Below the pieces are notes generated by a model. That model did not search any database. It was not told where the DNA came from and saw only the letters and a program-made list of their open reading frames with translations. Position numbers and translations under genes: made by a program. DNA of 64,000 bases from IMG/VR virus record IMGVR_UViG_3300036766_000988, positions 124,001 through 188,000 of that record, one strand, 5' to 3'. This document shows positions 7,745 to 25,820 of this stretch, piece by piece. How positions within the stretch are numbered: position 1 is the stretch's first letter; every line of letters starts with the position of its first letter.

Positions 7745-9328
7745 TCAGTCCTCGGTCTTGACGAGCTTCAAAGCGCCGCTCTTGTTGGGGTCCGCAGCGA
7801 ACCGAGCCCGAACTCCCTCGTTCAGATCCGGATCGTACCCAACCCAGTCGATCACTTCCTTGACCTCGTCGACCATGGTCTTGAGGATGCGGGGCTTCGA
7901 CTCCAGCTCATCCGCGAGGATCGCCTCATCGAGCGTGGCCTTACCCGCCGCGAAGCTTTCGATCATCGCAGCTTTGATGCTCTGCTCGATCTCACGTCCG
8001 ACCATGCCCTGAGCCTTCTCGGAGAGCATCGCAAGATTGAAGTCCTCGATCCTCTGACCGACCTTGACGATGTGGATCTTGAGGATGTCGATGCGGTCTT
8101 CCTCCGACGGGAGGTCGAAGAAGAAACGCTGATCCATGCGGTTGACGAACTCGACCGGCAGGGTCTTGAGGCTGTTCGCCGTCATGGCGAGGCACACGGG
8201 AGCCTTGGTCTCCTGAAGCCACGTGCTCAGGATCCCGATGGTGCGGCTCGTCGTACCGGCGTCCGAGGCCCCACTCGACTGGCCGCCCGAGAGGGACTTC
8301 TCCGCTTCGTCGATCCAGACGATGCAGGGAGCGACCGCTTCGATGATCTTGAGCGCACGGTAGACGTTCGCCTCCGAATCACCGACGCCCGAGCTGCGGA
8401 GCCGACCCATCTCCAGCCCGACCACCGGGAGCCCCCAGGCGTTGCCCAGGGCCTTCGTGGTGAGGCTCTTGCCGGTACCCCAGATGCCGACGCACAGGAT
8501 GCCCTTCGGAGGCACGAGCCCGAACTGACGACCCTTCTCGCTCCACGAAAGAGCCGACTTCCGCGCCCAGTCCTTGAACCGGCCGACGCCGCCGACCGTA
8601 TCGAACGAGCACTCGTCCGTGTTGATGTACTGCACGAGGTCCGTCTTGCGGAGCTGCCGACGACGGAACTCCGAGATGTAGTCGGGGTCGATCCGCTTCG
8701 GGTTCACCGCATCCTTGCGGGTCTTCACGATGCTCTGGGCGATCGACATGTCGATTTCGTAGCTCGTGAGCCCCTTGAAGTGCTTGGCGGAGTCCTTCGG
8801 AGGCGTCATCCCGAGGTAACCGCAGGCCTCTTCGACGGTCGAGAGGATCTCTTCCGAGGAAAGCCCGTTGTCGTGAACGACCTCGATGTAGCGCGAGAGC
8901 TTCTCGGGCACGACCTTGCGGGCGCCGACGAAGATCAGAAGCTTGATCGTCCGGATGTCGTTGTGGACTTGGTGGATGATGTTGAGGATGCGCCGCTGGA
9001 CGTGGGGATCGTTGAGGTAGCGCTCTGGGTCCGTGATGACGTAGAAGTTCTGGTCGTCCTTCGGGTCGTCCTTGTAGACCTGGATGAGCGCAGTGTGGAT
9101 GTCCGCCGCGTCACGGTTCTCCTGGTGGAGACGCGAACCCCAATCCTTGATGAGCTGGTTGAGCGGGACCAGACCGAGCGCCGCATTGAAGACCCACACG
9201 CGATCGGCGAGCTTCTTCAAGGTGTCGCGAAGCGTGATCAAGAAGCGGTCTTCCTCGTCGGTGACGAAGTAGATGCACCGCGACAGGCTTCGGAGGTGGA
9301 ACAGCAGCTCTTCGTTCGTCTTGGCCAT
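7745..9328 (-). CDS. Ycf46-family AAA+ ATPase
   Basis: Degenerate N-terminal AAA-like domain; active domain with GIWGTGKS, IVWIDEAEK, MTANSLKTLPVEF..RMD..FFFDLP. Confidence 0.88.
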   Translation of the reverse strand: MAKTNEELLFHLRSLSRCIYFVTDEEDRFLITLRDTLKKLADRVWVFNAALGLVPLNQLIKDWGSRLHQENRDAADIHTALIQVYKDDPKDDQNFYVITDPERYLNDPHVQRRILNIIHQVHNDIRTIKLLIFVGARKVVPEKLSRYIEVVHDNGLSSEEILSTVEEACGYLGMTPPKDSAKHFKGLTSYEIDMSIAQSIVKTRKDAVNPKRIDPDYISEFRRRQLRKTDLVQYINTDECSFDTVGGVGRFKDWARKSALSWSEKGRQFGLVPPKGILCVGIWGTGKSLTTKALGNAWGLPVVGLEMGRLRSSGVGDSEANVYRALKIIEAVAPCIVWIDEAEKSLSGGQSSGASDAGTTSRTIGILSTWLQETKAPVCLAMTANSLKTLPVEFVNRMDQRFFFDLPSEEDRIDILKIHIVKVGQRIEDFNLAMLSEKAQGMVGREIEQSIKAAMIESFAAGKATLDEAILADELESKPRILKTMVDEVKEVIDWVGYDPDLNEGVRARFAADPNKSGALKLVKTED

Positions 9329-10108: not shown

Positions 10109-10729
10109 CTAGCTGCTTTTGCGAAATTGCACCGTGGTACCAGGAGAGACAATCTGCTCGGTTGTGTCAGACGGCAAGGGGGTTGTCCAAGGATCTCGCT
10201 TAGGAATAGACGCAGACGGAGGAGATGGCAAGGTCTTCCCCGACTGATCGGGGGCATTGCCGAGCGCTAACCGGGCTGCGGTCGCAGTACTTCGAGTGGA
10301 AGCTGTGTTCTTTTGTGGGCTTGCCGTCCGATCCTCCGGCGACGTTGGTACGTCATTTTTCGTCGCAGGAGCCTGCATTGCAAGAGGGGCGGGCGGGGCA
10401 GGAATTGGGGATAGAGCTGCGGGCTCGACGAGATCCCGTGGATCGTTCCATGCCGAACGGATCTCGGGAGTCCGCCCCACATCGATCGTGATAAACTTCT
10501 GCGCGGTGATCTGCGGGAAACGAGGGTCGTCGGGCGTCATGCGGGAGGGGTTGTTGAAGAGCCTGTCCTCCCAGTTCGACACCCGTACCTCAAACCTCGA
10601 CTTGCCCCCAATGCTCCGGGTGCAGTCGAGGTTGAAGCACCGGGCACACCACTGCTCCTGGAACGTGTCGAGCGCTGTCCCACTCTCTGCGCACTCCGGC
10701 AGTAGATCTCGACGTGTCCCGGCCATCAC
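10109..10729 (-). CDS. hypothetical protein with N-terminal Cys cluster and low-complexity Pro/Ala/Thr tail
   Basis: ECA...WCARCFNLDC; 206 aa ORF. Confidence 0.55.
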   Translation of the reverse strand: MMAGTRRDLLPECAESGTALDTFQEQWCARCFNLDCTRSIGGKSRFEVRVSNWEDRLFNNPSRMTPDDPRFPQITAQKFITIDVGRTPEIRSAWNDPRDLVEPAALSPIPAPPAPLAMQAPATKNDVPTSPEDRTASPQKNTASTRSTATAARLALGNAPDQSGKTLPSPPSASIPKRDPWTTPLPSDTTEQIVSPGTTVQFRKSS

Positions 10730-11001: not shown

Positions 11002-11874
11002 CTAGAGGAAGGCGCGGATGCAGATCCGCTTCTTGGCCGGAGTCAGGCTGGACTTGTTGATCGCCTCGGTGAGCGTGTAGCCGTCCGTGAGGAGCGTGAA
11101 GATCTCCTTCTGGGCCGACTCGTCGACACCCTTGGACGAGAGCTTGTCGAGAGCCCTCGACAAGGCGACCTGAGCCTCGATGCGCGTCTCGGCGACGTCA
11201 TCGCGGATCGTGTCCTCCCAGTAGTTGTTGTAGCCGCCCGCTGCCGTGTGGAACTGCGGGACGTTGTCCCCAAGAAGGTTCTTGCCGGGCATGGAATCCC
11301 CCGTGCGATCCTTCCACTTGCGCGAGCGGGTACGGCAGAAGTTCGCGAAATGATGGCGAACGCTGGTCCCGAGGTAGTTGAGAAACTGGTACGGCGTTGC
11401 CTTCGGAGCCGAGATCGTGATCTCCCCCTGATCCTTCCACTTCATCTCGTCGTTCCGCGTGGACAGCTCGACGATATCCTCACCACGGTAGGTGGCCTTC
11501 GGCGACGCATAGCCACCCGTGATCGGATCCGGCATCCACTTGCAGATGACCCGAGCGCCGTCCTTCTTCTTCCCCTGCTTGTGCCCCTTGCGGTAGCTCC
11601 ACTGACGAGATCGCCACTGCGTGAAGCGGATGCCGCCGAGGAACGCGCAGGCTTCGAGAGCCGTCATGGTCTCCGGAACAGAGCACGAGACGCGCTCGTG
11701 GAACTTCTCGATCACCTGCGCCTGGAGAAGCTTCTCCCACACATCCTGGCAAGCGTCTTCGAAGTTGGTGACGACCGTGTTCAGCTTGCGAATCTCGTTC
11801 GCAACGAACGGAGCGAAATCCCGGTACAGCTCGGTGTTGTCGCGGGGAATACCCGGACGCACGCGCATCGTCAT
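11002..11874 (-). CDS. ECF-like RNA polymerase sigma factor with internal insertion
   Basis: Region 2-like FAPFVANEIRKL..NFEDACQDVWEKL and FLNYLGTSVRHHFANFCR; region 4-like EIFTLLTDGYTLTEAI; start codon uncertain. Confidence 0.6.
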   Translation of the reverse strand: MTMRVRPGIPRDNTELYRDFAPFVANEIRKLNTVVTNFEDACQDVWEKLLQAQVIEKFHERVSCSVPETMTALEACAFLGGIRFTQWRSRQWSYRKGHKQGKKKDGARVICKWMPDPITGGYASPKATYRGEDIVELSTRNDEMKWKDQGEITISAPKATPYQFLNYLGTSVRHHFANFCRTRSRKWKDRTGDSMPGKNLLGDNVPQFHTAAGGYNNYWEDTIRDDVAETRIEAQVALSRALDKLSSKGVDESAQKEIFTLLTDGYTLTEAINKSSLTPAKKRICIRAFL

Positions 11875-12215
11875 GATGATCGTCCTCTCTCGTAGGTTGA
11901 GGCTACTACGCGGGCGACCCATGCCGTTCAGCCGCCCCCGTACCCAAAACGCCGTGCCCAGCTTTTTGGGAGCCCACTTCGTACCGCTTTCCTGATCTTC
12001 CTGTCAACCTCTACGGAGACGAAAGTAGTAAAAATTAAGGCAGTCCCGTATAGGAACTTTCCTGTGGGCTACGTACCGGTACTTCCTCTCTAGCTGGACT
12101 GTACGTTAGGGTTGAACCTGAGCGATTCCCGGTGTATGGGTGTCGATGTCTCTCGTGCCTCCTTCGGCGATCCCGCTGTCGAAGTGAGTCGTGCCAAGGC
12201 GGGGGCCGCTCCTTC

Positions 12216-12842
12216 ATGCACCGCAAAATGAGGGAGCGGCAGCTCTTTCCGCGACACATCTTTTCCTACATGGACGAACAATTCGGCGAAGGAGATCCCG
12301 AGGTAAAGCGCATCATCGCCGAGATGAACGCGCTCAACACGGCGCTCCAAGCCCTCGACAATCCACAAGAAGTCCCCAACGCACTGCGTCTCGTGCGTCA
12401 AGTCCGAGAGACCCATCTCGAACCGGAGACCTTCGAGGGCTTCGTCATCCTGGTCGCCATGTCGAAAATCGTAGCCGCTCAAGCTCCTACGAATCCCCCC
12501 CGACTTCTTCTGGGGCACCCCTGGACGACCCACGTCTTCGAGCAGGTCGGGTTGGCTTGGGTAGCCTGGACGGCCCAACGCAGCCCCGAAGCCTTGAGGT
12601 GCATCTACCGACTGCGTGATGTCCAGAAGGAGCGCGAGCTGGGGGAAGACCGCTCGGGAGCAATCCAGCTCCTGGCCCTCTACGACTGGGCCCGGGCTGT
12701 CGAGGCCCTGGCCAACGAAATGCCGACAGAGGCCGAACGCTTCTTCAAGCGGGCCACAGCGATCGGGGCAAGTTTCGGTACGGAGAGCCATCCCGTTGTC
12801 CTGTGGACGATGGCGGCGAGTCTTTTCCCACCCACCATCTGA
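12216..12842 (+). CDS. hypothetical all-helical protein
   Basis: GC3-rich long ORF; start uncertain. Confidence 0.55.
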   Translation: MHRKMRERQLFPRHIFSYMDEQFGEGDPEVKRIIAEMNALNTALQALDNPQEVPNALRLVRQVRETHLEPETFEGFVILVAMSKIVAAQAPTNPPRLLLGHPWTTHVFEQVGLAWVAWTAQRSPEALRCIYRLRDVQKERELGEDRSGAIQLLALYDWARAVEALANEMPTEAERFFKRATAIGASFGTESHPVVLWTMAASLFPPTI

Positions 12843-12844
12843 GG

Positions 12845-13285
12845 TCACTTCGGGAGGTTCACCCGGGGCGTCGAACGGACCATCTCGACGTAGTTCGAGA
12901 GCACCGCCTTCTGGGCGGGGTTCAACCTGGGAAGCTTGCTTTCGTAATCGGCTGCGATGTCGATCATGACAACGGGCCTTTTCACGAAGAGGCTGTGGAA
13001 GACCTCGGGAGGCAACGAAGTCTCCAAGCTGGCGAGGTTCATCCCCTTCTTGGCCGTCGGAACGGGCTTCACGCCCACGATCGTGGCCACCCCGAGGTTG
13101 CCCTCGATCTCCACGGAGTTCTCCCCCGAGAGCGCCTGTCGAGCCACCCCCTCAGCACGGAGGTGGGGCTTCACAGCTTCCAGCTCCTGGGTGAGCTGCA
13201 CGATCTCTCGGTGGGTTTCGATGGCGAAGTCGACCACCGAGGCCAGATTCCCTGAAGCCAAGACGTCCTTGGAGGACTTGAGCAT
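12845..13285 (-). CDS. hypothetical protein
   Basis: GC3-rich ORF starting MLKSS with a GGAG-type SD-like sequence upstream. Confidence 0.55.
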   Translation of the reverse strand: MLKSSKDVLASGNLASVVDFAIETHREIVQLTQELEAVKPHLRAEGVARQALSGENSVEIEGNLGVATIVGVKPVPTAKKGMNLASLETSLPPEVFHSLFVKRPVVMIDIAADYESKLPRLNPAQKAVLSNYVEMVRSTPRVNLPK

Positions 13286-13439
13286 CGTTCTCTCCTGCCA
13301 GGAGACGATCCGCTCGATGGTCGAGCTTGGATGGCCTACAAGGCTTCGAGCCCACTCTACACGGGATCTTCGTCGAGGACAAACCCGCCACATCTGAGGC
13401 GCTTCGGCTACCGCTTTTTGCGTCTCTTACCTGGCCTTT

Positions 13440-14040
13440 TGCAGCAGCTCTCGTTCGAGCTGTCGTACTTCCGCTACCTTACACAGCAGCTCTAGATGGA
13501 CTCAGAGTTGCTCTGCTCGGATCCCGACCGTCTGCCGTACATGCCGTACGAAGACTCGCTCTGGTTGTTGCTACTCTACGTGCCATCACTGCTGTCGCTA
13601 CTGCTGTGCCGCTTGAGAAACCACTCGAAGCAGAGCTTCTCGTGAGAATCTTTGAACAGAGAATGGGGTCTCAGGTTTCACTCAGTATCTTCTTCAAGGA
13701 GTGATCCAAGGAGAAGAGTGAAGGATCAGATAGTTTCGGGATGATCCTTCTGCGAGCTACTTCGAAGCCTCTCAGGGGATCCCGACCCTTGAGAGGCTCT
13801 TCCTCGATGTGCAGCTTGAAGTGGCCTTCCTCCAAGCGAGAGATCGAGGTCCGTTGGCAGGTTCTTCCGAGGAAGAGGCTCTCCTGCCACCTGAGCAGTT
13901 GGATTTTTCAGCAGCTTGGGTCCTCGAAGGAAAACCTGAGCTGGCTGTCCCTCCAAAGAGGGTACGGAACCTGGTAACCGTTGGCTGAGCCTCGGAGGGG
14001 ATACACCTCGGTTCCGGGCTTCGCAAGGAAGAAAGAAGAG
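13440..14040 (+). ncRNA. candidate large structured non-coding RNA
   Basis: At least nine complementary stems in ~600 nt with no credible CDS; G-T wobble pairs are compatible only on the plus strand. Confidence 0.55.
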
Positions 14041-14107
14041 ACCGAAAGAACGCGTCTCATAAGGGATTTCTCAAGCGCAGAATCTTCGATGAAAGCGCTC
14101 TAGTAAG

Positions 14108-14440
14108 ATGAAAATGAACCCCGCTACCCTCGTCGAGATGAGCGATGTCGTTGGCCGTCCGAAGGTGAAGATGACGCTCCCTGTTCCTTTGCGGATCGGA
14201 GACCGCATTCACCTGGCGTTTCAGCTTCGTCGTGTAAACGGAGGCCGGTCCGAAGTCTTGGACATCTCAGGGGACTTCCGAATCACAGCCGTCTCGTTCG
14301 ACGCCTCCAACGGCCCCACCCGGCAGATCCTCGCGGTCGAAAGCGCTGGGAAAGCTCCCACCTGGCGTGCCGTGAAGACGGTCCCGGCTCCTGAGCGCAA
14401 GCTCGGGCCGACCCGCTTCCCGCGCACCTCTGTCGTATGA
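14108..14440 (+). CDS. hypothetical beta-rich protein
   Basis: 110 aa ORF coupled to the next ORF (ATGA overlap). Confidence 0.6.
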   Translation: MKMNPATLVEMSDVVGRPKVKMTLPVPLRIGDRIHLAFQLRRVNGGRSEVLDISGDFRITAVSFDASNGPTRQILAVESAGKAPTWRAVKTVPAPERKLGPTRFPRTSVV

Positions 14441-14709
14441 CGTCGGCACTTCCCGAGGCCATTTGGATTCCCGGGCGGAGTCCGTCGGTCTACGTCGGCA
14501 CGCCTTTCGAGATGGTGCGGTCGATGGCCGCCGAGATGGGCGAAGACGTGACGGTACGGGATGCCGTGGAGCTGCTGCTCCACGCGCTGGCCGAGAACCG
14601 ACGCCTCATCATCGGCCTTCCAGCCAACGTGCCGGTGGAAGACCTCACCCGGCTATTCGTCACGGCCTTGCTCGACACAGGGCTCGCCAAGACGATGGCC
14701 GCCGCCTAG
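14437..14709 (+). CDS. hypothetical protein
   Basis: 90 aa ORF, start overlaps the upstream stop. Confidence 0.55.
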   Translation: MTSALPEAIWIPGRSPSVYVGTPFEMVRSMAAEMGEDVTVRDAVELLLHALAENRRLIIGLPANVPVEDLTRLFVTALLDTGLAKTMAAA

Positions 14710-15137
14710 CTCAAGAGCGCCTTGGCTCGCGTCCAGAGAGCCCGCCAGAAGTCGACCTCGGGTTCGGACGCCCTACCGGCGCCTCGGTACGGGTGGGGCC
14801 CTGGAATGGGCAGCACGACGGCAGGGAGGTCGTTCTCCGAGCGGTCCTTGGCCCAGGACTCTTGCAGAGCAGCAAGTCCTATCGGGTAGGGTTTCTGCAC
14901 CTCGTTCAACAGGGAGGGCCTGATGGATGGCTGTCGGGCGGTTTCATTTTCGGCAGCCCACGGGGGACCGGGGATCACCTGGCCGCCGCCCGTGACGCCT
15001 CCTTGAGCTTGGCGCATCTCCGTCATCAGCCGCTGGGACCAGGCCGGAGACGAAGTTCGTTGCGATAGCCGCTTGTCTTGCTCGCGGAGTTCCTTGATCG
15101 TCTCGACCACTTCGTCCGACCACTGTTTTCCCGACAT
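14706..15137 (-). CDS. hypothetical protein
   Basis: 143 aa ORF with upstream GGTGTA motif. Confidence 0.5.
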   Translation of the reverse strand: MSGKQWSDEVVETIKELREQDKRLSQRTSSPAWSQRLMTEMRQAQGGVTGGGQVIPGPPWAAENETARQPSIRPSLLNEVQKPYPIGLAALQESWAKDRSENDLPAVVLPIPGPHPYRGAGRASEPEVDFWRALWTRAKALLS

Positions 15138-15166
15138 CGTGGTTCTTCTTCTACACCTGGAAGGGC

Positions 15167-15892
15167 ATGGATCGTCTCGCCCAGCGGGTGTTGACCCGCT
15201 TCATGACCCGGGTGGCCTTCGAAAAGGGCCTGGTCTCCTTCGGGATCAAGGATCTCGAACAGCTTTCGAAGATGGGGCGCCAGTTCGCGGTCATCTCCGC
15301 CTACCGGCCGCCGGATGAGCACGGCAAGCACGAGAACAAGCAACGCCACGGGGACTTGATGGCTGACCTCCAGCGCATGGGGTACCGCAAGTTCGAGACG
15401 CTCCGCAGCTCCTGGGAGGACATGGCCTCGGGCACCCGCCACGGTGAGCGCTCTATCCTGGTTCCCGGGATGAGCTTCAAGGACGCTACCCACCTGATGA
15501 AGAAGTACAACCAGGACGGGATCCTCTACAAAGATCCCTCCGGGTCGGTCGGCATCTACAAGAAGGACGGCAAGGCCGAGATGGCGTACGACCCCAAGAC
15601 CGGCGATCCCGCCATCTCGAAGGCGCTCGACAAGAGCGAGTACTCGAAGGGCCGTTCGATGAGCTTCGGCCTCCAGCTCGTCGAGGGAGAGATCCCCTGG
15701 TCCGACGGGCCGGTCACCGGCGAGCAGATCAAGAAGCACGTCGAGGCTACGGCCGCGAAAGCAGAGAAAAAGACGCCCAAGGAGTCCCCCAAAGAGGAAG
15801 CTCCCGAATCCTCGAAGTGGTGGGAATCCCAGACCCCCGCCTTCAAGCGGAAGTACATCGAAGAGCACCCGCAGAGCGTGTACGCGCCTTAA
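15167..15892 (+). CDS. DUF3293-like phage protein
   Basis: FAVISAYR...ENKQR..DL..MGY...ERSILV....KKYNQDGIL pattern. Confidence 0.5.
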   Translation: MDRLAQRVLTRFMTRVAFEKGLVSFGIKDLEQLSKMGRQFAVISAYRPPDEHGKHENKQRHGDLMADLQRMGYRKFETLRSSWEDMASGTRHGERSILVPGMSFKDATHLMKKYNQDGILYKDPSGSVGIYKKDGKAEMAYDPKTGDPAISKALDKSEYSKGRSMSFGLQLVEGEIPWSDGPVTGEQIKKHVEATAAKAEKKTPKESPKEEAPESSKWWESQTPAFKRKYIEEHPQSVYAP

Positions 15893-16116
15893 TTCTCCGG
15901 CTGCTTCTTGGTCAGCTCCACCAGCATGGCCTCGGTCTTCTCCAGCAGCTCCTCGGGCGATGCAGCCTCGACCACGATTCCACTCGGGACGAGATCCTGA
16001 AGCACCGGACACCGTCTGCTGGTCAGACTCCCAAGGGTCTGCCGCAGACGGCTCTCGTTGATGGGCTTGTCCGGCGCTTCCGTCCTGGCCCTCTTCTTCG
16101 ATCTCCGATTGCCCAT
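15889..16116 (-). CDS. hypothetical protein
   Basis: GGTGTA motif 11 nt before the ATG at 16116. Confidence 0.5.
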   Translation of the reverse strand: MGNRRSKKRARTEAPDKPINESRLRQTLGSLTSRRCPVLQDLVPSGIVVEAASPEELLEKTEAMLVELTKKQPEN

Positions 16117-16132
16117 CTCGCTCACCTACACC

Positions 16133-16564
16133 TTACAGCACTCTGGACACAGAATGGACCCAGGTGGCGAACGCGTCTTCCGGGGTGATCTCATGGTACG
16201 TCCCGAAGTGGAAGTTCCACTTGTGGTGGTTTGCCGGGAATCCCACCGGGAACGGCCGTTGCGTCGGCTTGCCCCAGTCCTCTTGCTGCTGACGCAGGAT
16301 GTCTTCGAAACTCCCGAAAACGGTCATGTACCCATCGTTGGCGAGCAGCCCCTTCTCACCCTCCCGGTAGTGGATGGTGATGCCGTACGGACCGAACTTG
16401 GTGGGCAGCGTCCAGGTGTACCCGGAAGAAGGGATGTCCTTCACGTAGCCGTCGTTCTTCTTCCCACCGTGGGCCAGCACGAACTCACCGACGAGGGAGA
16501 ACAGCTTGCTGAGCGCAGCATCCGCCTTCTTCTGGGAGAAACGGGGCTTGGGTGAGGTCTTCAT
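16133..16564 (-). CDS. hypothetical protein
   Basis: Class A promoter motif 6 nt before the ATG. Confidence 0.6.
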   Translation of the reverse strand: MKTSPKPRFSQKKADAALSKLFSLVGEFVLAHGGKKNDGYVKDIPSSGYTWTLPTKFGPYGITIHYREGEKGLLANDGYMTVFGSFEDILRQQQEDWGKPTQRPFPVGFPANHHKWNFHFGTYHEITPEDAFATWVHSVSRVL

Positions 16565-16644
16565 GACGGTACTACGTCGGGTGAGGGGAAGCGTTCAACT
16601 TCAAACTGACTTGACTTCTTTGTAGACAACCTGGATGATAAAGG

Positions 16645-17589
16645 ATGCGCAAAGTCCTCTTACAAGGAATCTACCAGATTCGGAACACTACCAACGGGCA
16701 CTCCTACATCGGAAGCTCAGTCAACATTCACAGCCGATGGTCCGGGCACAAGTGCGACTTACGACGGGGCACCCACGACAACCCCATCGTGCAGGCGGCT
16801 TGGTTGAAGTATGGGGAAGACGCCTTCGAATGGCTCGTGCTTGAGACCGTAGAAAACAGGCTGAAGCTGCTTGAGCGTGAAGCTCAACACATGCTCGTTC
16901 TGAAACCCGAGTACAACCTGTCAAACCCCAACGAAGAGACCCTTAACATCGGACATCCCATGTCTGATGAGGCAAAGGCTCGAATCAGCAAGGCCAATAA
17001 GGGACGGAAGCGCACTGAAAAGACCCGCGACTTGATGAGTCGGCTCGCGAAGGTTCGAGGCATGCCTCAAGAAGCACAGGCACGTCAACGAGAGGCGGTG
17101 ACAGGAAGGCATCGTTCTCCCGAAGTGCGGGCGAAGATTGCTGCATCGCATCTCGGGATACGTCCTTCGGAAGAAACGAAGGCGAAGATCAGTCAAGCGT
17201 TGACGGGACAACCTGGTCGAAAGCACTCAGAAGAAGCTAAAGCTAAAATCGGTGCTGGTCGGAGGGGGAAGAAGCACACCCCAGAATCTCGGGCAAAGAT
17301 GTCAGAAGCACACAAAGGACATGAAGTCACCCCCATACATCGGGCCAACATGTCTGCTGGACAGAGGGGTCGAAAACACTCTGAAGAAACGAAAGCCAAA
17401 ATCGGAACTGGGCGAAAGGGAAAACGACACACGGCCGGGGCCAAAGCCAAGATCGCGGCTGCTCGACGTGCCCGATCTACCAGCGGTGTCGCTGCTGTTG
17501 CGCTCGTTGAGCAAGCAGAGTGTCTCGCTGCCAGGAATCCATCCATCCATCCGACGTCTTGTACTGGCCGAACCGACGATGCAGCTTGA
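16645..17589 (+). CDS. GIY-YIG homing endonuclease with NUMOD3 repeats
   Basis: GIYQIRNTTNGHSYIGSS...RW..H...KYGEDAFEWLVLE; repeated KHSEExKAKI / KHTPESRAKMS. Confidence 0.92.
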   Translation: MRKVLLQGIYQIRNTTNGHSYIGSSVNIHSRWSGHKCDLRRGTHDNPIVQAAWLKYGEDAFEWLVLETVENRLKLLEREAQHMLVLKPEYNLSNPNEETLNIGHPMSDEAKARISKANKGRKRTEKTRDLMSRLAKVRGMPQEAQARQREAVTGRHRSPEVRAKIAASHLGIRPSEETKAKISQALTGQPGRKHSEEAKAKIGAGRRGKKHTPESRAKMSEAHKGHEVTPIHRANMSAGQRGRKHSEETKAKIGTGRKGKRHTAGAKAKIAAARRARSTSGVAAVALVEQAECLAARNPSIHPTSCTGRTDDAA

Positions 17590-18088
17590 TCATCTCCGGT
17601 AAATTGTCGAGGGTAACGTACGGCCAGATGTCGTGGTAGATGGTCGAGAACTTGGTACCCTTCACCGGCTTCCACTCGAAGATGTCGGCTTCGACGACCT
17701 CGACCTTCTTGGGGAGGTAGGGTCCGACGAGCTTCACGACGTCGGGGCTCATCTCGACAACCGTCACCTTGGTGACCTCGGGCTTTGCCGCGATGGGGTG
17801 CAGGATCATCCCGAGGCCGAGTCCGGCGATCAGGACGTGACCGTGCGCCTGTCGGATGACCTGACGGTTGGTCCGCTGCTCCATCGGGGTGTCGCTCATC
17901 ATGAGGGTCCCGTTGACGAGCAGGTGCGCGTACACACCTGCCGGAACGTAGTCGTCCATGCGGCGGTGAATCGCGGCTCGGAGCTGCGTCATGTCGGCCG
18001 CCTGCGGGGTGACCTCGACGTGTCGGATCTCCACCTTGCCCGAGATACCCTCGGGGATGATCTTGGCGAGGCTGGGGAACTGGATCAC
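17477..18088 (-). CDS. class I SAM-dependent methyltransferase (spermidine-synthase-like)
   Basis: VLIAGLGLGMI, VTVVEMSPDVVKLV, EADIFEW, IYHDIWP. Confidence 0.8.
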   Translation of the reverse strand: MIQFPSLAKIIPEGISGKVEIRHVEVTPQAADMTQLRAAIHRRMDDYVPAGVYAHLLVNGTLMMSDTPMEQRTNRQVIRQAHGHVLIAGLGLGMILHPIAAKPEVTKVTVVEMSPDVVKLVGPYLPKKVEVVEADIFEWKPVKGTKFSTIYHDIWPYVTLDNLPEMIKLHRRFGQYKTSDGWMDSWQRDTLLAQRAQQQRHRW

Positions 18089-18600
18089 GACTCGTCTCCG
18101 AGGTCGGGGAGGATGCCGGGATTTCGGCGTTCGATGGCCCGGATGGCGGCGGTGATGTCCTTGACCGTCGTGGCAGCGGGAGTCTTGGGAAGCGCTTCGT
18201 AGTAGGCCTTCATCTTGTCGAGGATGTACTCGACTGCGAGATCGACCCTGCCGTAGTTGACGGTGTGCCGACCCTTGTAGGCCTTATCGTTGTAGTCCTT
18301 GAGGGTCGGCGGGTTCATGAAGTGACCCTTGTGGACCCAGCAGTCGATGAAGATGCCGTCGGTGTTTCGGTGCTCCCCAAACGTGATGAGGAGACAGGTC
18401 TTGTCCGAGAAGCTCCGACGGACGTTCAAGCAGACGCCGCGCTCCCGACCGTTGTACCAGGGGGACGTCTCGATCTCGATCTTGTACGTACCAAGATCCT
18501 TGTCGTACTCGGCGAAGGCGGGCTCCCGACGCGAGAGCATCGCCAAGACCGCCAAGGCCTGGGGGTTGAGGTTGAAGGTGGGGTCGCCGATGGTGTTCAT
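18085..18600 (-). CDS. hypothetical protein
   Basis: 171 aa ORF coupled to the methyltransferase. Confidence 0.6.
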   Translation of the reverse strand: MNTIGDPTFNLNPQALAVLAMLSRREPAFAEYDKDLGTYKIEIETSPWYNGRERGVCLNVRRSFSDKTCLLITFGEHRNTDGIFIDCWVHKGHFMNPPTLKDYNDKAYKGRHTVNYGRVDLAVEYILDKMKAYYEALPKTPAATTVKDITAAIRAIERRNPGILPDLGDES

Positions 18601-18607
18601 GGTTGTG

Positions 18608-18970
18608 CTACGCCGGGCAGGTCTCTTCGATCAACCGGCGAAGATCGTCCGGCCGCATCGGTTTCAGGAACACCTTGGTGGCCCCACAGGCGGTCCCGAT
18701 TCGGAAGACCTCCATGTTCCCCGAAATGAGCACCACGGGGATCTCGGGGTATCGAGCCCGCACGATCTCACAGAACTCGTCGCCGTCCATCCTGGGCATT
18801 TCGAGGTCCGACAGGATGAGGTCCGGCCTGAAGCCCCCTTCGAGAAGCGGTAACGCCTCCCCAGGGCACATGCACAGGGTGGAGTCGCAGTTCAGCATCG
18901 AGAGCATCCGGCCGTACGCGGAACGTATCTGCCGATCGTCTTCGACGACGAGAACCTTGGGAGCTGCCAT
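18608..18970 (-). CDS. stand-alone response regulator receiver (CheY-like)
   Basis: VLVVEDD, DLILSDLEMPRMDG (phospho-Asp), VVLISG, FLKP. Confidence 0.9.
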   Translation of the reverse strand: MAAPKVLVVEDDRQIRSAYGRMLSMLNCDSTLCMCPGEALPLLEGGFRPDLILSDLEMPRMDGDEFCEIVRARYPEIPVVLISGNMEVFRIGTACGATKVFLKPMRPDDLRRLIEETCPA

Positions 18971-18995
18971 GGGGGCCTTCTTGGGGGTGAGGGGT

Positions 18996-19493
18996 TCAGG
19001 CGGTGTGGCGGGCGAAGTCGAGCTTCTTCGAGGTGAGCGCCGCCGCAGCCAGCTCGGCCGCGTTGGGGGCACCAGCCGCCACAGCTTCGAGGACGGCTTC
19101 GAAGAGCTTGTCTTCGAGCCCGTGGGCGGCATCGAAGTCGCCAGCACAGGCCATGATCTCGGCGACCTTCTGGGTCACGTCCTTGACCGTCAGGCTGAGA
19201 TGGGCGGCGAGGTACCACTGGCCCTTGTCGAACTTGATGAGCCCGCCCTTGCGGAGGCTCTGAAGGGCGCGGTCGACGACGCGCTCGACGGGCAGCCCGT
19301 GATCGCCATCGACGAAGCGGGTCGTGAAGCCGCACACCACGACGAAGTGGCCCGACGTGCGACCCTGGGTCGGGTTCTTGAGGTACTCCAAGATCTTCGT
19401 CTTGGTGGTCTCGACCGCGAGCTTCTCGGTGCTGCCTTCGGGGGTCTTCATGGGGGTCTCCTGGGGGACGTGAAAGACGGGGAGAGCCCCCAT
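18996..19493 (-). CDS. hypothetical two-domain phage protein
   Basis: Class A promoter upstream; C-terminal GDFDAAHGLEDKLF..VL.A.A pattern. Confidence 0.55.
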   Translation of the reverse strand: MGALPVFHVPQETPMKTPEGSTEKLAVETTKTKILEYLKNPTQGRTSGHFVVVCGFTTRFVDGDHGLPVERVVDRALQSLRKGGLIKFDKGQWYLAAHLSLTVKDVTQKVAEIMACAGDFDAAHGLEDKLFEAVLEAVAAGAPNAAELAAAALTSKKLDFARHTA

Positions 19494-19534
19494 CTAGCAG
19501 TACTACGCCGTGGGGGCCCTTGGTTCAGCAGCTT

Positions 19535-19876
19535 CTAGAAGCTGGGATCGCGGTAGGCCGAGTACTCGCCGAGCGAGAGGAAGCCGCTGCGCTTGTTGCC
19601 CTTCGAGACGTAACGGCCGTTCTTGCGGCGCGTGAAGACGCGGACGGCGCCCTCGGGGTCGGCGACGAACAGGTAGCGCTGCTGCTCCGAGAAGATCGAG
19701 CCCGATGCCAAGCGGCTCTTGGCATCGCGTGTGGTGACCTCGTGGCCGCTCTTCGAGACGGCGACGACCGTCACGGCGTAGCGGTCACTGCCGACCTGGT
19801 AGGAGGCGGGCAGCCCGACGACGGGGACGACGGGGGTTTCTTCGGACGAGAGATTCGAGGCGGTCGAGGTGGGCAT
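19535..19876 (-). CDS. hypothetical protein
   Basis: Class A promoter 6 nt before the ATG. Confidence 0.6.
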   Translation of the reverse strand: MPTSTASNLSSEETPVVPVVGLPASYQVGSDRYAVTVVAVSKSGHEVTTRDAKSRLASGSIFSEQQRYLFVADPEGAVRVFTRRKNGRYVSKGNKRSGFLSLGEYSAYRDPSF

Positions 19877-19905
19877 GAGGCTACTACGCTCCTTGAAGAT
19901 TTGGT

Positions 19906-20187
19906 TCAACCCTGGATCGGATCCCGCGTGTAGGTCGCCAGGATCTCGCCCGTCCGCTGGTCCTTGATTCGAGCCGTCAGGATGTGGGTCAGCCCGATGT
20001 GGCTGTTGACGCCCCCTGGGGAGGTCGAGGCCTCGTACCCAAGAGCGTACTTCTTGAGGTTCTCGGTCGTGGCCTTGCCGTCAGCCGGGATCAGGCCCCG
20101 CTTGCGCATCCTCCACTCGGAGGGAGTCCAGTGCCCACGATCCGTGGTGACCTCGACGACGAACGGGATGAGTCGGCTGTGTCCCAT
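19906..20187 (-). CDS. hypothetical protein
   Basis: Class A promoter 6 nt before the ATG. Confidence 0.6.
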   Translation of the reverse strand: MGHSRLIPFVVEVTTDRGHWTPSEWRMRKRGLIPADGKATTENLKKYALGYEASTSPGGVNSHIGLTHILTARIKDQRTGEILATYTRDPIQG

Positions 20188-20217
20188 GAAGTTACTACGC
20201 CGTCGATCCCTTTGGGT

Positions 20218-20517
20218 TCAGCCGAGAAGATGCAGCACTTCTCGGACGTCGCTGTCGGTCAGCCCACAGGACTCTCCCTCCGCGTCCGCCTTGCAGACGA
20301 AGAAAGTACCCACGATGTGGGTATCGCCGACCACCCGGTTGAACGGCAGCCGTTGGAGGAGCCCTTCCTCGTTGCAGAAGAGGTCGAACCGGCCCAGCCG
20401 GACCAGCTCGATCAAGCCGCCCACGACCGCCTGCATCCCTTCCAAGGACGACGGAATCTCCTGGATCATGGGAAATCCGCCCGGCTTGCAGATGACGACC
20501 TGCATGGTTTTCGGCAT
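20218..20517 (-). CDS. DUF3846 domain protein
   Basis: LEGMQAVVGGLIE...LFCNEEG...LPFNR...IVGTFFV. Confidence 0.75.
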   Translation of the reverse strand: MPKTMQVVICKPGGFPMIQEIPSSLEGMQAVVGGLIELVRLGRFDLFCNEEGLLQRLPFNRVVGDTHIVGTFFVCKADAEGESCGLTDSDVREVLHLLG

Positions 20518-20528
20518 GAAAGTCTCCC

Positions 20529-20735
20529 TCAGATCTTTCGGATGCGGTCCGGCGGACAGACGACCATCAGGGTGCGGCCGTTGTCCCACAGGACATCGAT
20601 TTGGGTGAAGTTGTCGCCGGGCCCGAGCCGCACAGGTTCGACGTGACGAACCGTGCCCTTGGTACCCGGCGCAATCGGATTGGGGTCGTCGCTCATGCGG
20701 ATCATCTCGATCCGGTCACCGGTGGCGAACATCAC
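20529..20735 (-). CDS. DUF4314 domain protein
   Basis: GDRIEMIRMSDDPNPIAPGTKGTV...QIDVLWDNGRTL. Confidence 0.75.
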   Translation of the reverse strand: MMFATGDRIEMIRMSDDPNPIAPGTKGTVRHVEPVRLGPGDNFTQIDVLWDNGRTLMVVCPPDRIRKI

Positions 20736-21246: not shown

Positions 21247-21275
21247 GCTGCTACTACGCCGCCAAGAGGCTGCGT

Positions 21276-23140: not shown

Positions 23141-23169
23141 GGCGGTACTACGTTGCCAGAAGCCAGGGT

Positions 23170-25818: not shown

Positions 25819-25820
25819 GG

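What the first reader, a model, noticed from the sequence alone, without database searches (positions are those of the whole stretch)
11002..11932. ECF-like sigma factor with an excisionase/MerR-type HTH apparently inserted in region 2
Seen: the sigma region-2-like segments NFEDACQDVWEKL and FLNYLGTSVRHHFANFCR are separated by roughly 90 extra residues containing MTALEACAFLGGIRFTQWRS...KATYRGEDIVEL, which resembles the HTH_17/Xis helix-turn-helix plus wing. The gene carries a class A promoter (CGTAGTA at 11904..11910, TGAAC 15 nt upstream). Inference: an early-expressed sigma with an extra DNA-binding module that could recognise the second (GGTGTA) promoter class, giving a two-step cascade.
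Basis: partly seen in the sequence, partly recalled or inferred. Interest (0 to 1): 0.6.

Follow-up and report, generated by a model that had tools for sequence, protein, structure and literature searches.

The report
Phage sigma factor with built-in wHTH
A huge sediment phage encodes an ECF-like sigma factor with a MerR/excisionase-type winged-helix domain spliced into the loop that normally reads the -10 promoter element; this architecture is shared by a large metagenomic family and co-occurs with an unusual -35-less GGTGTA promoter.

Summary
Window 11002..11874 (-) encodes a 290-aa two-domain (sigma2 + sigma4) sigma-70-family protein. Its region 2 is split by an ~80-95 aa module that folds as a MerR/Xis-type winged helix.

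The insertion lies between region 2.2 and region 2.3, in the ECF "specificity loop" that reads the flipped -10 base. All 95 aligned full-length relatives carry the insert, out of 187 clusters at 50% identity, all from phage or metagenome contigs. One shorter, unaligned relative (P0027) lacks it.

A complex model places regions 2.1/2.2 on the RNAP beta' clamp helices (score 0.70, best control 0.01).

- Class A (CTGAAC-N15-CGTAGTA) has 23 copies, is specific to this subclade, is mostly leaderless, and precedes the sigma gene.
- Class B (GGTGTA, no -35, ATG 9-10 nt downstream) is the top upstream hexamer here and in three distant huge phages carrying the same sigma. None of the four encodes an RNAP.

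The assignment sigma -> GGTGTA is therefore plausible but unproven. Each phage also has a second sigma-like paralog and its own bipartite promoter class. The insert's recognition helix is poorly conserved.

Verdict: a new variant of a known kind, with the mechanism only partly resolved.

The parts
11002..11874 (-). CDS of the sigma factor ('sigma-ins'), 290 aa plus stop. The in-frame extension to 11922 is probably not translated.
   Evidence: ORF. The 290-aa form is the one on record and aligns with homologues. An SD lies upstream.
11689..11847 (-). Sigma region 2.1-2.2 (residues 10-62), the predicted beta' clamp-helix binding surface.
   Evidence: Sigma70_r2 profile positions 1-37. Structural matches to sigma2 domains. 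Predicted contacts of residues 13-18 and 39-51 with E. coli beta' 271-298.
11437..11679 (-). Inserted MerR/excisionase-type winged-helix module (residues 66-146): beta-alpha-alpha-wing-alpha, with a variable Lys-rich loop.
   Evidence: AF2 pLDDT is 88-98 per 10-residue block across this module in the full-length model and 81 when folded alone. VIA hits are nearly all MerR/Xis/TerS wHTH domains, Z 5.5-3, about 54 aligned residues, rmsd 2-2.7 A. Present in 95 of 95 aligned relatives.
11305..11406 (-). Sigma region 2.3-2.4 (residues 157-190), the most conserved segment. F164, Y167 and L168 are near-invariant; N178, R181 and R185 are invariant.
   Evidence: Alignment A2. The second half of Sigma70_r2 (profile 40/44-71) is matched at this position in relatives.
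11005..11199 (-). Sigma4-like C-terminal HTH domain (residues 226-290).
   Evidence: Full-length structural alignments to sigB, sigma28, sigma32 and gp36 reach residue 290. Weak profile hits to LuxR/sigma4 HTH chains. Pfam r4, r4_2, GerE and HTH_23 match some relatives.
11883..11891 (-). Shine-Dalgarno GAGAGAGGA, 8 nt before ATG 11874.
   Evidence: Sequence; conserved in L065.
11904..11932 (-). Class A promoter GCTGAAC-N15-CGTAGTA in front of the sigma gene. Here it has a 29-nt leader, unlike most class A sites, which are leaderless.
   Evidence: Conserved upstream of the orthologue in L065, and present as CTGAAT-N15-CATAGTA in L066.
11978..12007 (-). Distal canonical sigma70-type promoter candidate: TTGACA (12007..12002), 18-nt spacer, TACGAA (11983..11978).
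   Evidence: Both hexamers are conserved in L065 while the spacer has diverged. Pattern match only; no transcript data.
12131..12136 (+). Class B element GGTGTA, divergent from the sigma gene, with ATG 9 nt downstream (12146).
   Evidence: the same arrangement is conserved in L065.

Best explanation
**What it is (shown in silico).** The gene encodes the phage's own promoter-specificity subunit. It is a two-domain, ECF-like member of the sigma-70 family and docks on the host RNA polymerase core through its region 2.1/2.2 and the beta' clamp helices. Its -10 'specificity loop', between the region 2.2 and 2.3 helices, has been expanded by a folded MerR/excisionase-type winged-helix module.

**What it reads (inferred).** The holoenzyme it forms reads phage promoters whose -10 region is a GG(T/C)(G/A)TA-type element. 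This element sits 8-10 nt upstream of a start codon, so the transcripts are leaderless.
- The invariant region 2.3-2.4 probably reads the invariant core. That core is the -35-less GGTGTA element (class B), which is conserved in every phage carrying this sigma and which drives replication and nucleotide-metabolism genes.
- The variable sigma4 helix probably reads the phage-specific -35 of the bipartite class. In this phage that is class A, CTGAAC-N15-CGTAGTA, which includes the sigma gene's own proximal promoter.
- First expression would come from the canonical TTGACA-N18-TACGAA promoter further upstream, read by host sigma-A.

**What the insert does (weakest step, inferred).** The winged helix sits next to the fork junction. 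It would add contacts to duplex DNA just upstream of the melted -10 base, acting as a substitute for the missing sigma region 3.0. That would help explain -35-independent initiation.
For: **Architecture.**
- Sigma70_r2 is split: profile positions 1-37 lie before the insert and 40/44-71 after it. The match is above Pfam's cut-off in relatives (P0150 31.3 bits, P0133 29.9 bits), and 46 of 95 relatives match r2.
- The AF2 model has pLDDT 90.7. Most of the top 50 matches among 48,161 PDB representatives are sigma factors. The best matches are sigB (8x6g) Z 7.8, SigI6 7.4, RpoE 7.2 and sigmaE region 2 (2mao) 6.5. Matches that span residues ~3-190 align only about 80 residues, so they skip the insert.
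- The insert alone gives hits that are almost exclusively MerR/Xis/TerS winged helices.
- Position of the insert: in ECF sigmas the specificity loop (SigH 72-79, just before W81) binds the flipped master -10 base (PMC6411747). Here the insert lies between ..EKF.. and ..YQFLNYL...

**Core binding.** The complex model with beta' 250-320 scores 0.70 against a best control of 0.01. This mark was reached by 51 of 78 solved complexes and 2 of 108 mismatched pairs. The runs agree in at least 86% of contacts and the partner's pLDDT is 54. Contacts are residues 13-18 and 39-51, which is region 2.1/2.2.

**Promoters.**
- GGTGTA is the most enriched upstream hexamer in G000 and in relatives G001 and G002, and second in G003. 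Observed/expected counts are 49/5.8, 67/9.0, 36/3.7 and 51/6.4. The sigmas of these phages are about 30% identical and GC ranges from 0.48 to 0.60.
- GGTGTA is followed by ATG at +9/+10 in 17-30% of all occurrences, against about 3% for 59 permuted hexamers.
- There is no -35 conservation upstream of it.
- No beta, beta' or T7-type RNAP gene is found in any of the four genomes, one of which is complete.
- Region 2.3-2.4 is the most conserved segment and the sigma4 recognition helix the least.
- The bipartite classes of three phages carry near-cognate -10 elements (GGCGTA, GGCATA, nnTGTA) in the same register, RTA-N8-ATG.
- Hybrid CTGAAC-N14-GGTGTAGTA sites exist.
- A conserved TTGACA/TACGA pair with a diverged spacer lies upstream of class A.
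Against: - No experiment or transcript data exist. The DNA is found only in DNA runs of sediment metagenomes.
- A second sigma-like paralog is conserved in all four phages, usually immediately downstream of this gene. It has a normal short loop and could be the GGTGTA reader.
- The link between this sigma and GGTGTA is lineage co-occurrence among related phages, not independent replication.
- The insert's recognition helix is poorly conserved (1.28 bits per column).
- The insert's net charge averages -0.3 +/- 5.1 across the family.
- Pfam HTH_17 does not match this protein.
- A natural insert-less member, P0027, occurs in two samples.
- Structural Z-scores are moderate (at most 7.8 for sigma2, at most 5.5 for the insert), and Foldseek gave no significant E-values.
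- The complex pass may reflect the model's memory of solved sigma-RNAP complexes, and it used E. coli beta' rather than that of the unknown host.
Confidence: 0.5

Rival explanations
1. Division of labour between two phage sigmas. This protein has an intact sigma4 and reads only the bipartite class A promoters (-35 CTGAAC, -10 CGTAGTA), including its own, in a classic autoregulated ECF-type loop primed by the host-type TTGACA promoter. The -35-less GGTGTA promoters are read by the second sigma-like paralog, whose sigma4 recognition helix looks degenerate. That would resemble the T4 gp55 style of -35-independent initiation.
For: - Class A resembles ECF promoters (GAAC ... CGT). If transcription starts at the ATG, its CGTA lies at -12..-9, the ECF register described in PMC6411747.
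- The sigma gene carries class A in G000, L065 and L066. It carries the analogous bipartite motif in G003.
- The -35 hexamers differ between phages (CTGAAC, TTGATC, TAGAGT), as does the sigma4 helix.
- The paralog is conserved in all four genomes.
Against: - Region 2.3-2.4 of this protein is nearly invariant across 95 relatives. The bipartite -10 elements vary between phages, whereas GGTGTA does not.
- The paralog's corresponding segment is more variable, though it is known from only 4 sequences.
- No bipartite class was detected in G002, where gene calls were poor.
Confidence: 0.25
2. Simple two-step cascade. Class A is read by a host sigma (primary or ECF). This phage sigma reads only GGTGTA. 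The similarity between the class A and class B -10 regions is coincidental or reflects overlapping promoters.
For: - Class A drives clusters of small, early-type genes plus the sigma gene.
- Its hexamers CTGAAC and TAGTAS are 17 bp apart, the sigma70 geometry.
- Class A is absent from distant relatives, as expected if it tracks the host.
Against: - A canonical TTGACA-N18-TACGA promoter is separately conserved upstream of class A. This suggests the host's primary sigma uses the ordinary consensus and that class A is something else.
- Class A lacks the -7 T and sits too close to the ATG for a sigma-A -10 element.
Confidence: 0.2
3. The insert is not a DNA reader. This is compatible with any promoter assignment. 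The insert would instead be a protein-docking or regulatory module: a binding site for an anti-sigma, for the paralog, or for an RNAP lobe. Alternatively it would be a structural brace for the -10 pocket.
For: - The net charge is neutral on average across the family.
- The recognition helix is variable, while helix 1 and the WMPxP..G..S wing are conserved.
- MerR-like folds used for protein binding (CbpM 3ucs, the TniQ C-terminus) are among the structural hits.
- The insert-less P0027 exists.
- The loop tolerates duplication and nested Cys-rich elaborations.
Against: - The fold family is overwhelmingly DNA-binding.
- The N-terminal half of the recognition helix keeps S/T83, W/F84, Q86 and W/F87.
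- The insertion site is adjacent to promoter DNA in all solved sigma complexes (established knowledge; PMC6411747).
Confidence: 0.3
4. The protein is not a working sigma. It would be a decayed sigma-like gene or a decoy that blocks the host clamp helices.
For: Sigma70_r2 is below Pfam's cut-off in this protein.
Against: - It belongs to a large family under purifying selection, with invariant region 2.4 residues.
- Sigma2 and sigma4 are both intact in a confident model.
- The phages encode no RNAP of their own, yet carry strongly conserved non-host-like promoters.
Confidence: 0.05

Closest known systems
ECF (group 4) sigma factors, e.g. E. coli sigmaE, M. tuberculosis SigH, B. subtilis SigW
   Same: - Two-domain sigma2-sigma4 architecture without regions 1.1 and 3.
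- Acidic region 2.2 helix docking on the beta' clamp helices.
- F..YL....N....R motif in region 2.3-2.4.
- A gene preceded by a GAAC..CGT-type promoter.
   Different: - The specificity loop is 8-12 residues in ECF sigmas. Here it holds an ~80-aa folded winged helix plus linkers.
- The family is found only on phage or metagenome contigs. None was found in 185,579 species genomes with the patterns used.
- No anti-sigma factor was identified.
- Phage sigmas were explicitly left out of the ECF re-classification (PMC7826278).
Phage phiEco32 gp36 (PDB 9m7y chain F) and other phage-encoded minimal sigmas such as T4 gp55 (7d7d)
   Same: A phage-encoded sigma2/sigma4-like factor that redirects host core RNAP to middle/late phage promoters. 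Both are among the structural hits (Z 5.2 and 6.4).
   Different: - Neither is reported to carry an inserted DNA-binding-type domain in region 2 (recalled from their descriptions, not checked in the structures here).
- gp36 works with gp79 (PMC12276001); from memory, gp55 works with gp33 and the sliding clamp.
- Here the conserved neighbour is a second sigma-like paralog.
MerR-family N-terminal domains and excisionase / HTH_17 proteins (BmrR, TipAL, CueR, Tn916 Xis, RdfS, BldC, terminase small-subunit DBD 7lxs)
   Same: Fold and topology of the insert: beta-alpha-alpha-wing-alpha. About 54 residues superpose at 2.0-2.7 A. The sequence pattern is also similar: T..EA...LG[IV]S...W ... P.P..G..S..A.Y...DI..L.
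   Different: - It is not a free-standing protein and has no MerR dimerisation helix.
- There is no Pfam HTH_17 match in this protein.
- A variable 10-90 aa loop lies between the recognition helix and the wing.
- The recognition helix is poorly conserved.
Sigma70 region 3.0 / extended -10 (TGn) recognition
   Same: Functional analogy only. Extra duplex contacts just upstream of the -10 element make the -35 element dispensable. GGTG lies directly upstream of the TA in class B.
   Different: - Region 3.0 is a helix of sigma3 located C-terminal to sigma2. Here the candidate reader is inserted within sigma2.
- The motif abuts TA with no spacer base.
- The contact has not been demonstrated.
Lineage-specific insertions in sigma, such as the sigma70 non-conserved region between 1.2 and 2.1
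   Same: A large insertion tolerated within or next to sigma2 without loss of core binding.
   Different: - The NCR lies between regions 1.2 and 2.1, far from the -10 pocket, and is not an HTH.
- This insertion is in the loop that forms the -10 base pocket.

Membership tests
Sigma-70 family, ECF-like (group 4) architecture | Sigma2 domain (regions 2.1-2.4) recognisable by sequence and fold | tested here: met
   The Pfam Sigma70_r2 match in this protein is partial: profile 1-37, 18.6-18.8 bits, below the 24-bit cut-off, because the domain is split. Relatives exceed the cut-off (31.3, 29.9, 25.8 and 24.7 bits). In G003 both halves match, 1-35 and 44-71. 46 of 95 relatives match. Most of the top 50 structural hits are sigma2 domains, Z 5.2-7.8, about 80 residues at ~3 A.
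Sigma-70 family, ECF-like (group 4) architecture | Sigma4 domain (HTH that binds the beta flap and the -35 element) | tested here: met
   The model has a C-terminal helical HTH domain at 226-290, pLDDT above 90. Full-length alignments to sigB, sigma28, sigma32 and gp36 reach residue 290. Weak profile hits to sigma-H and LuxR-type HTH chains (E 0.1-0.3). Pfam r4, r4_2 and GerE match a few relatives. DNA or flap binding was not tested.
Sigma-70 family, ECF-like (group 4) architecture | No region 1.1 and no region 3; short sigma2-sigma4 linker | tested here: met
   The protein is 290 aa, of which about 95 are the insert and its linkers. An acidic linker of ~35 aa (191-225) joins sigma2 to sigma4. 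Structural matches to group 1 sigmas cover sigma2 only.
Sigma-70 family, ECF-like (group 4) architecture | Binds RNAP core through region 2.2 and the beta' clamp helices | tested here: met
   In silico only. ipSAE is 0.70 against a best control of 0.01 (51 of 78 solved complexes and 2 of 108 mismatches reach the mark). Agreement between runs is at least 86% and the partner pLDDT is 54. The interface is residues 13-18 and 39-51 with E. coli beta' 271-298. The pass may come from memory of solved complexes, and the host's beta' is unknown.
Sigma-70 family, ECF-like (group 4) architecture | Short flexible specificity loop between regions 2.2 and 2.3 | tested here: not met
   The loop carries an ~80-aa folded domain. 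This is the departure that makes the protein a variant rather than an ordinary ECF sigma.
Sigma-70 family, ECF-like (group 4) architecture | Directs promoter-specific initiation; cognate anti-sigma factor or autoregulation | not testable with these tools
   Only context is available. A class A (ECF-like) promoter precedes the gene. No anti-sigma factor was recognised among the neighbours.
MerR / excisionase (HTH_17) winged-helix superfamily (insert only) | beta-alpha-alpha-wing-alpha fold | tested here: met
   The insert model has pLDDT 81. The hit list is dominated by TerS DBD 7lxs (Z 5.5), GIsul2 Xis 8c3t (4.9), MerR-family N-domains (4.8-3.4), RdfS, BldC, Pukovnik Xis, Tn916 Xis and TorI. 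These align 50-58 residues at rmsd 2.0-3.0 A and cover whole target domains. Z values are low in absolute terms, as expected for a 55-residue domain.
MerR / excisionase (HTH_17) winged-helix superfamily (insert only) | Sequence match to Pfam HTH_17 / MerR models | tested here: not met
   No HTH_17 or MerR hit for this protein or for seven inserts, even at E <= 10. The profile against PDB sequences gave nothing. Four of 95 relatives match HTH_17 (best 5e-5) and one matches Rv2175c_wHTH, but the position of those matches was not determined.
MerR / excisionase (HTH_17) winged-helix superfamily (insert only) | Binds DNA | not testable with these tools
   Indirect and mixed. S/T83, W/F84, Q86 and W/F87 are conserved. 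However, the helix as a whole is variable and the net charge is about 0 across the family.

The most novel reading that the evidence does not exclude
The winged helix in the specificity loop is a second, built-in DNA reader. It lets a two-domain sigma recognise a compact 7-8 bp element (cGGTGTAr) partly as duplex and partly as a flipped base. This would make initiation independent of the -35 element and place the transcript start on the start codon. It would be a previously undescribed mode of promoter recognition in the sigma-70 family, used by a whole lineage of huge phages to run a leaderless gene-expression programme on host RNAP.
Probability: 0.22. Interest if true: 0.82.

Novelty: new variant of a known kind. 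Interest (0 to 1): 0.62.

Why it matters
Sigma factors are regarded as having a fixed toolkit: sigma2 reads the melted -10 element, sigma3 reads the extended -10, and sigma4 reads the -35. The ECF specificity loop is the short element that sets -10 specificity.

A large natural family exists in which that loop hosts a complete winged-helix domain. That domain can also be duplicated, decorated with Cys-rich modules, or lost. This shows the loop is an evolvable insertion platform and offers a natural test of how much extra recognition can be wired into sigma2.

Practical consequences:
- It gives huge phages without their own RNAP a candidate master regulator.
- It defines two compact, strongly conserved promoter types, including a -35-less, leaderless one. 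These make transcription programmes predictable in uncultured 250-400 kb phages.
- Such sigma/promoter pairs are potential orthogonal parts for synthetic biology.

Tried and rejected
**Searches that returned nothing useful**
- Foldseek against the PDB gave no significant E-value for the whole model or for the insert. The exhaustive VIA search was used instead.
- PHROGs gave only a noise hit, and tblastn against 50,697 phage records gave nothing.
- Pfam LEA_3a hits fall on the Lys-rich loop and were dismissed as low-complexity noise.
- Stand-alone relatives of the insert were not found, either by profile against PDB sequences or by a 5.8-billion-protein word search with the insert alignment.
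- The scan of 185,579 species genomes found no bacterial copy, so it gave no host clue.
- No RNA runs exist. Only DNA runs of sediment and aquatic metagenomes hold the DNA.
- DNA for the closest homologues' long contigs (P0004, P0010, P0007, P0027) is not held; only their gene maps are.

**Conclusions corrected along the way**
- 'One sigma per genome' was wrong. A divergent second sigma-like paralog was found later.

**Ideas rejected**
- GGTGTA as a half-site of a palindromic operator. The TACACC-N3-10-GGTGTA pairs are few and are back-to-back divergent promoters.
- TGGGACCA / CTTTGGGA as a promoter in G001. It encodes a shared C-terminal peptide.
- An (A/G)ATGTA(A/G) 'late' motif. It is only 1.7-2.4-fold enriched, and only in G001.
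- A phage-encoded RNAP as the GGTGTA reader. No beta or beta' domain was found; the T7-type search also found none, but its control did not ring, so it is uninformative.

**Literature**
- Searches found no description of an insert-bearing sigma or of GGTGTA phage promoters.

Full report
**Setting**

The window is bases 124001-188000 of a 252,183-bp IMG/VR viral contig. The contig is linear, CheckV estimates it at 53% complete, and its GC is about 0.60. Near-identical DNA is held only by DNA runs of sediment metagenomes, and no RNA run holds it. No alternative genetic code was needed.

- An open frame runs 11002..11922 on the minus strand, 306 codons.
- The form on record, and the one that aligns with all homologues, starts at ATG 11874 and gives 290 aa. 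It is preceded by GAGAGAGGA at 11891..11883.
- Pfam matches Sigma70_r2 only over profile positions 1-37 of 71 (E 0.0017, below the cut-off). This is the expected signature of an interrupted domain.
- Relatives confirm it. Several exceed the cut-off with the same truncation at position 35-37. One matches positions 40-70 after the insert. In phage G003 the two halves (1-35 and 44-71) match about 99 codons apart within one frame.

**The family**

- An exhaustive HMMER search of 1.84 billion representatives found 187 clusters at E <= 0.001, of which 132 are at <= 1e-10.
- I aligned the 95 members of 240-345 aa (A2). Every one carries extra sequence of 54-165 aa at the same place. The insertion lies between the region 2.2 helix (ED..Q..W.KL....EKF) and the region 2.3-2.4 helix (F.NYL....NHFANFCRT..R).
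- Among these, 46 match Sigma70_r2, 4 match HTH_17, and a few match sigma4-type HTH models.
- The loop is evolutionarily plastic:
  - two tandem copies of the module in L009/P0013;
  - an extra N-terminal copy in P0007;
  - Cys-rich elaborations nested in the module in P0078 and P0095;
  - a natural member without the module, P0027 (197 aa, seen in two samples).
- The family was found only on phage or metagenome contigs. A pattern scan of 185,579 species genomes found none, and the phage GenBank collection has none.

**Structure**

- AlphaFold2 with A2 gave a confident model: mean pLDDT 90.7, with the insert blocks at 88-98.
- An exhaustive structural comparison with 48,161 PDB representatives put sigma factors in most of the top 50 places. 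Examples are sigB 8x6g (Z 7.8), SigI6 (7.4), RpoE (7.2), sigmaE region 2 2mao (6.5), SigC, sigma70, T4 gp55 and phiEco32 gp36.
- Matches that span residues ~3-190 align only about 80 residues, so they skip the insert. Full-length sigmas extend the alignment to residue 290.
- The insert, folded alone from seven referenced sequences, has pLDDT 81 and the order beta-alpha-alpha-(loop)-beta-alpha.
- Its matches are almost exclusively MerR/excisionase-type winged helices. These include a terminase small-subunit DBD (7lxs, Z 5.5), the GIsul2 excisionase (4.9), many MerR-family N-domains, RdfS, BldC, Pukovnik Xis, Tn916 Xis and TorI. About 54 residues superpose at 2.0-2.7 A.
- Z values are modest, and Foldseek E-values were not significant. 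The evidence is the homogeneity of the hit lists and the full coverage of small target domains.
- By sequence the insert does not reach any Pfam HTH model. It is therefore a member of the fold superfamily, not demonstrably of HTH_17.

**Where the insert sits**

In ECF sigmas the loop between the 2.2 and 2.3 helices is the 'specificity loop'. It forms the pocket for the flipped master base of the -10 element (SigH residues 72-79, just before W81). It is disordered until DNA binds (PMC6411747). In this protein the module lies between ..EKF.. and ..YQFLNYL.., where F164, Y167 and L168 are nearly invariant. That the insert occupies the specificity loop is an inference from motif correspondence and the split HMM. 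It does not rest on a residue-level structural alignment.

**Core binding**

A complex model of residues 1-195 with E. coli beta' 250-320 scored 0.70 against a best control of 0.01.
- The mark was reached by 51 of 78 solved complexes and 2 of 108 mismatched pairs.
- The runs agree in at least 86% of contacts, and the partner pLDDT is 54.
- Contacts are residues 13-18 and 39-51 with beta' 271-298. This is the canonical region 2.1/2.2-clamp-helix interface, and the insert is not involved.
- The result shows likeness to solved sigma-core complexes. It does not prove binding, and the host is unknown.

**Promoters in this phage**

Class A is real.
- TGAAC-N13-17-CGTAGTA occurs 13 times in the window against 0 expected, and 23 times in the contig.
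- The fuller consensus is gCTGAAC-N13-gR-CGTAGTA-S.
- In 18 of the 23 sites an ATG follows exactly 5 nt after CGTAGTA, so the transcripts would be leaderless.
- The sigma gene is an exception, with a 29-nt leader and an SD.

Class B is also real.
- GGTGTA is the most enriched hexamer upstream of predicted genes, 49-51 observed against about 5.5-5.8 expected.
- It has no -35 conservation.
- The distance to the start codon peaks sharply at 9-10 nt.
- Without any gene calls, 30% of all GGTGTA occurrences are followed by ATG at +9/+10, against 3% for 59 permuted hexamers.
- Class B precedes AAA ATPases, a helicase, RtcB, a nucleotidyltransferase, a kinase, a NUDIX protein, an exonuclease and a DNA methyltransferase. 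This is a replication and nucleotide-metabolism ('middle'-type) set.

**Comparative evidence**

Three distant relatives of the sigma (~30% identity) lie on huge phage contigs. G001 is 398 kb with terminal repeats, is complete, and has GC 0.48. G002 is 323 kb and G003 is 312 kb. I fetched all three.
- GGTGTA is again the most enriched upstream hexamer in G001 and G002, and second in G003: 67/9.0, 36/3.7 and 51/6.4.
- It shows the same 9-10 nt spacing to start codons, the same absence of a -35 element, and 17-24% of occurrences followed by ATG at +9/+10.
- Class A is absent from these genomes: 0, 1 and 0 matches.
- None of the four genomes has a beta or beta' RNAP domain or a T7-type RNAP. The control for the T7 search did not ring, so that negative result is uninformative.
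- GGTGTA lies at about -16..-11 of leaderless transcripts, so it must be read by whatever occupies the sigma2 position.
- Its conservation across phages with very different GC content fits a phage-encoded reader, and this sigma's region 2.3-2.4 is nearly invariant (N178, R181 and R185 in 95 of 95).

**Complications that keep the assignment open**

1. A second sigma-like protein.
   - The ~270-aa gene immediately downstream of the sigma gene is a divergent sigma paralog. It occupies this position in G001, G002, G003, L065 and L066; gene maps of the closest homologues show a similar-sized gene there too.
   - Profile-profile probability is 74% (E 2.9e-5) over regions 2.3 to 4. Sigma70_r2 matches 2 of 4 members, near the cut-off in G003.
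   - It has a short loop and what looks like a degenerate sigma4 recognition helix.
   - In this phage it has moved about 40 kb away, to contig 94679-95467. It is still followed by the same methyltransferase.
2. A bipartite promoter class in each phage.
   - All are in the same register, RTA-N8-ATG.
   - The motifs are gCTGAAC-N13-GGCGTAGTA here, gTTGATCc-N12/13-cGGCATA in G003 (49 pattern matches, one directly upstream of the G003 sigma operon) and TAGAGTTT-N13-nTGTAATAT in G001 (35 pattern matches, roughly 25 close to the consensus).
   - Their -10 parts are one or two substitutions from GGTGTA, while their -35 hexamers differ.
3. Class A in the close relatives.
   - Class A is conserved upstream of the sigma gene in L065, and present as CTGAAT-N15-CATAGTA in L066.
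   - About 50 nt further upstream lies a canonical TTGACA-N18-TACGAA pair. Its hexamers are conserved in L065 while its spacer has diverged.
   - This suggests the host's primary sigma uses the ordinary consensus, and that class A is read by something else.
4. Conservation within the sigma protein.
   - Region 2.3-2.4: 2.51 bits per column.
   - Insert helix 1: 2.35.
   - Insert wing: 2.03.
   - Insert recognition helix: 1.28.
   - Sigma4 recognition helix: 1.13.
5. Charge. The insert's net charge averages -0.3 +/- 5.1 across the family, and is +6 in this protein.

**Most likely mechanism**

- Shown in silico: the protein is a sigma2-sigma4 factor with a winged helix in the specificity loop and a canonical core-binding surface.
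- Inferred: host sigma-A transcribes the sigma gene from the distal TTGACA promoter. The phage sigma then redirects host core RNAP to promoters with a GG(T/C)(G/A)TA-type -10 region positioned for leaderless transcripts.
  - Its invariant region 2.3-2.4 reads the invariant GGTGTA, so a perfect element needs no -35.
  - Its variable sigma4 reads the phage-specific -35 of the bipartite class, which has an imperfect -10 element. This class includes the sigma gene's own proximal promoter, giving positive feedback.
  - This single-reader model explains four observations. The -10 elements of the two classes are near-cognate and share a register. Hybrid CTGAAC-N14-GGTGTAGTA sites exist. Conservation is high in sigma2 and low in sigma4. 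The promoters upstream of the sigma gene are arranged in tandem.
- I give about 0.5 to the statement that this sigma reads GGTGTA-type elements.
- The main rival (0.25) gives class A to this sigma and GGTGTA to the paralog.
- The role of the insert is the weakest link. A DNA contact just upstream of the melted base, as a surrogate for the missing region 3.0, is attractive. However, the variable recognition helix, the neutral charge and the insert-less variant give roughly equal weight to a non-DNA role.

**Comparison with what is known**

- It works like an ECF sigma and like phage sigmas such as phiEco32 gp36 (PMC12276001) or T4 gp55.
- It meets the tested defining features of the sigma-70 family: sigma2, sigma4, the two-domain architecture and a predicted clamp-helix interface.
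- It departs from the family in one defining feature, the short specificity loop.
- The ECF re-classification explicitly omitted phage sigmas and mentions no insertions (PMC7826278).
- A comparative survey of jumbo phages describes minimal and RpoD-like phage sigmas but no insert-bearing form (PMC7824862).
- Full-text searches found nothing on GGTGTA phage promoters.
- I therefore rate it a new variant of a known kind.

**Limits**

- My gene calls are crude (GC3-based, 49-95% coverage). That is why the key promoter statistic was repeated without gene calls.
- The four genomes belong to one lineage, so the co-occurrence of sigma and motif is not statistically independent.
- Transcript starts, timing, host identity and all binding events are untested.

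Noticed in passing
G000 contig 94679-95467 (-) = L064:2646-3464 (-), outside the window. Also L030:15247-16056 (-), L043:15112-15876 (-) and L063:2666-3490 (+).: A second, divergent sigma-like paralog of ~270 aa is conserved in all four huge phages. It normally lies immediately downstream of the insert-bearing sigma and upstream of an N6/N4 DNA methyltransferase. In this phage the paralog-methyltransferase pair has been separated from the sigma gene by ~40 kb.
   Followed up: partly
Window, 13 sites from 11904 to 29892 (- strand). Contig-wide, 23 sites.: In 18 of the 23 class A promoter sites an ATG follows exactly 5 nt after CGTAGTA. This implies leaderless mRNAs for clusters of small genes. 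Class B sites likewise sit 9-10 nt before start codons. The host must therefore translate leaderless mRNAs efficiently.
   Followed up: partly
Window 11932-11977 (- strand), between TACGAA and the class A -35 element.: A ~26-nt block (GGCACGGCrTTTTGrGTACGGGGGCG) is almost perfectly conserved between this phage and L065, although the neighbouring spacer has diverged. It may be an operator or regulatory site controlling the sigma gene.
   Followed up: no
Window 12131-12148 (+).: A GGTGTA element lies divergent from the sigma gene, with ATG 9 nt downstream (12146) and TTGAAC 13 nt upstream. The arrangement is conserved in L065. The ATG is out of frame with the 236-aa ORF 12132..12842, so the true product here is unclear.
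   Followed up: no
G003 (about 49 sites, e.g. 301825 +) and G001 (about 25-35 sites, e.g. 41143 +).: Each relative has its own bipartite, leaderless promoter class. In G003 it is gTTGATCc-N12/13-cGGCATA-N8-ATG. In G001 it is TAGAGTTT-N13-nTGTAATAT, with an extra conserved CTGA-like element in the spacer.
   Followed up: partly
P0013/L009:2675-3157, P0007, P0078, P0095, P0027.: The insertion site is a hot spot. Variants include two tandem winged-helix copies, an additional N-terminal copy, CxxC..CxxC-rich elaborations nested inside the module (inserts of 157-165 aa), and one natural variant with no insert.
   Followed up: partly
G001, about 48-72 kb and elsewhere.: Dozens of small genes end in the same C-terminal peptide, encoded by CTTTGGGACCAT.. 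(..LWDHL..). This indicates a large paralogous family of small proteins. It first looked like a DNA motif.
   Followed up: partly
G000 45263, 170542 (window 46542) and 224131; G003, 11 sites.: TACACC-N3-10-GGTGTA arrangements are back-to-back divergent class B promoters only a few bp apart.
   Followed up: yes
G001 195-345 kb.: The region of very large (probably structural) genes has few GGTGTA sites. A recurring (A/G)ATGTA(A/G) appears upstream of several big genes. Enrichment is weak (1.7-2.4-fold) and is not seen in the other genomes. It may be a third, late promoter class.
   Followed up: partly
Window 2173-3450 (-) and 7745-9328 (-).: Two AAA+ ATPase genes (PHROG 4339 and 8638) and a helicase (47193-48950 +) are preceded by GGTGTA (the ATPase at 7745-9328 about 28 nt upstream of its start). 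The 206-aa ORF downstream of the sigma gene (10109-10729 -) has a CxxC...C motif, a low-complexity Pro/Ser/Thr-rich tail, and no family match.
   Followed up: no
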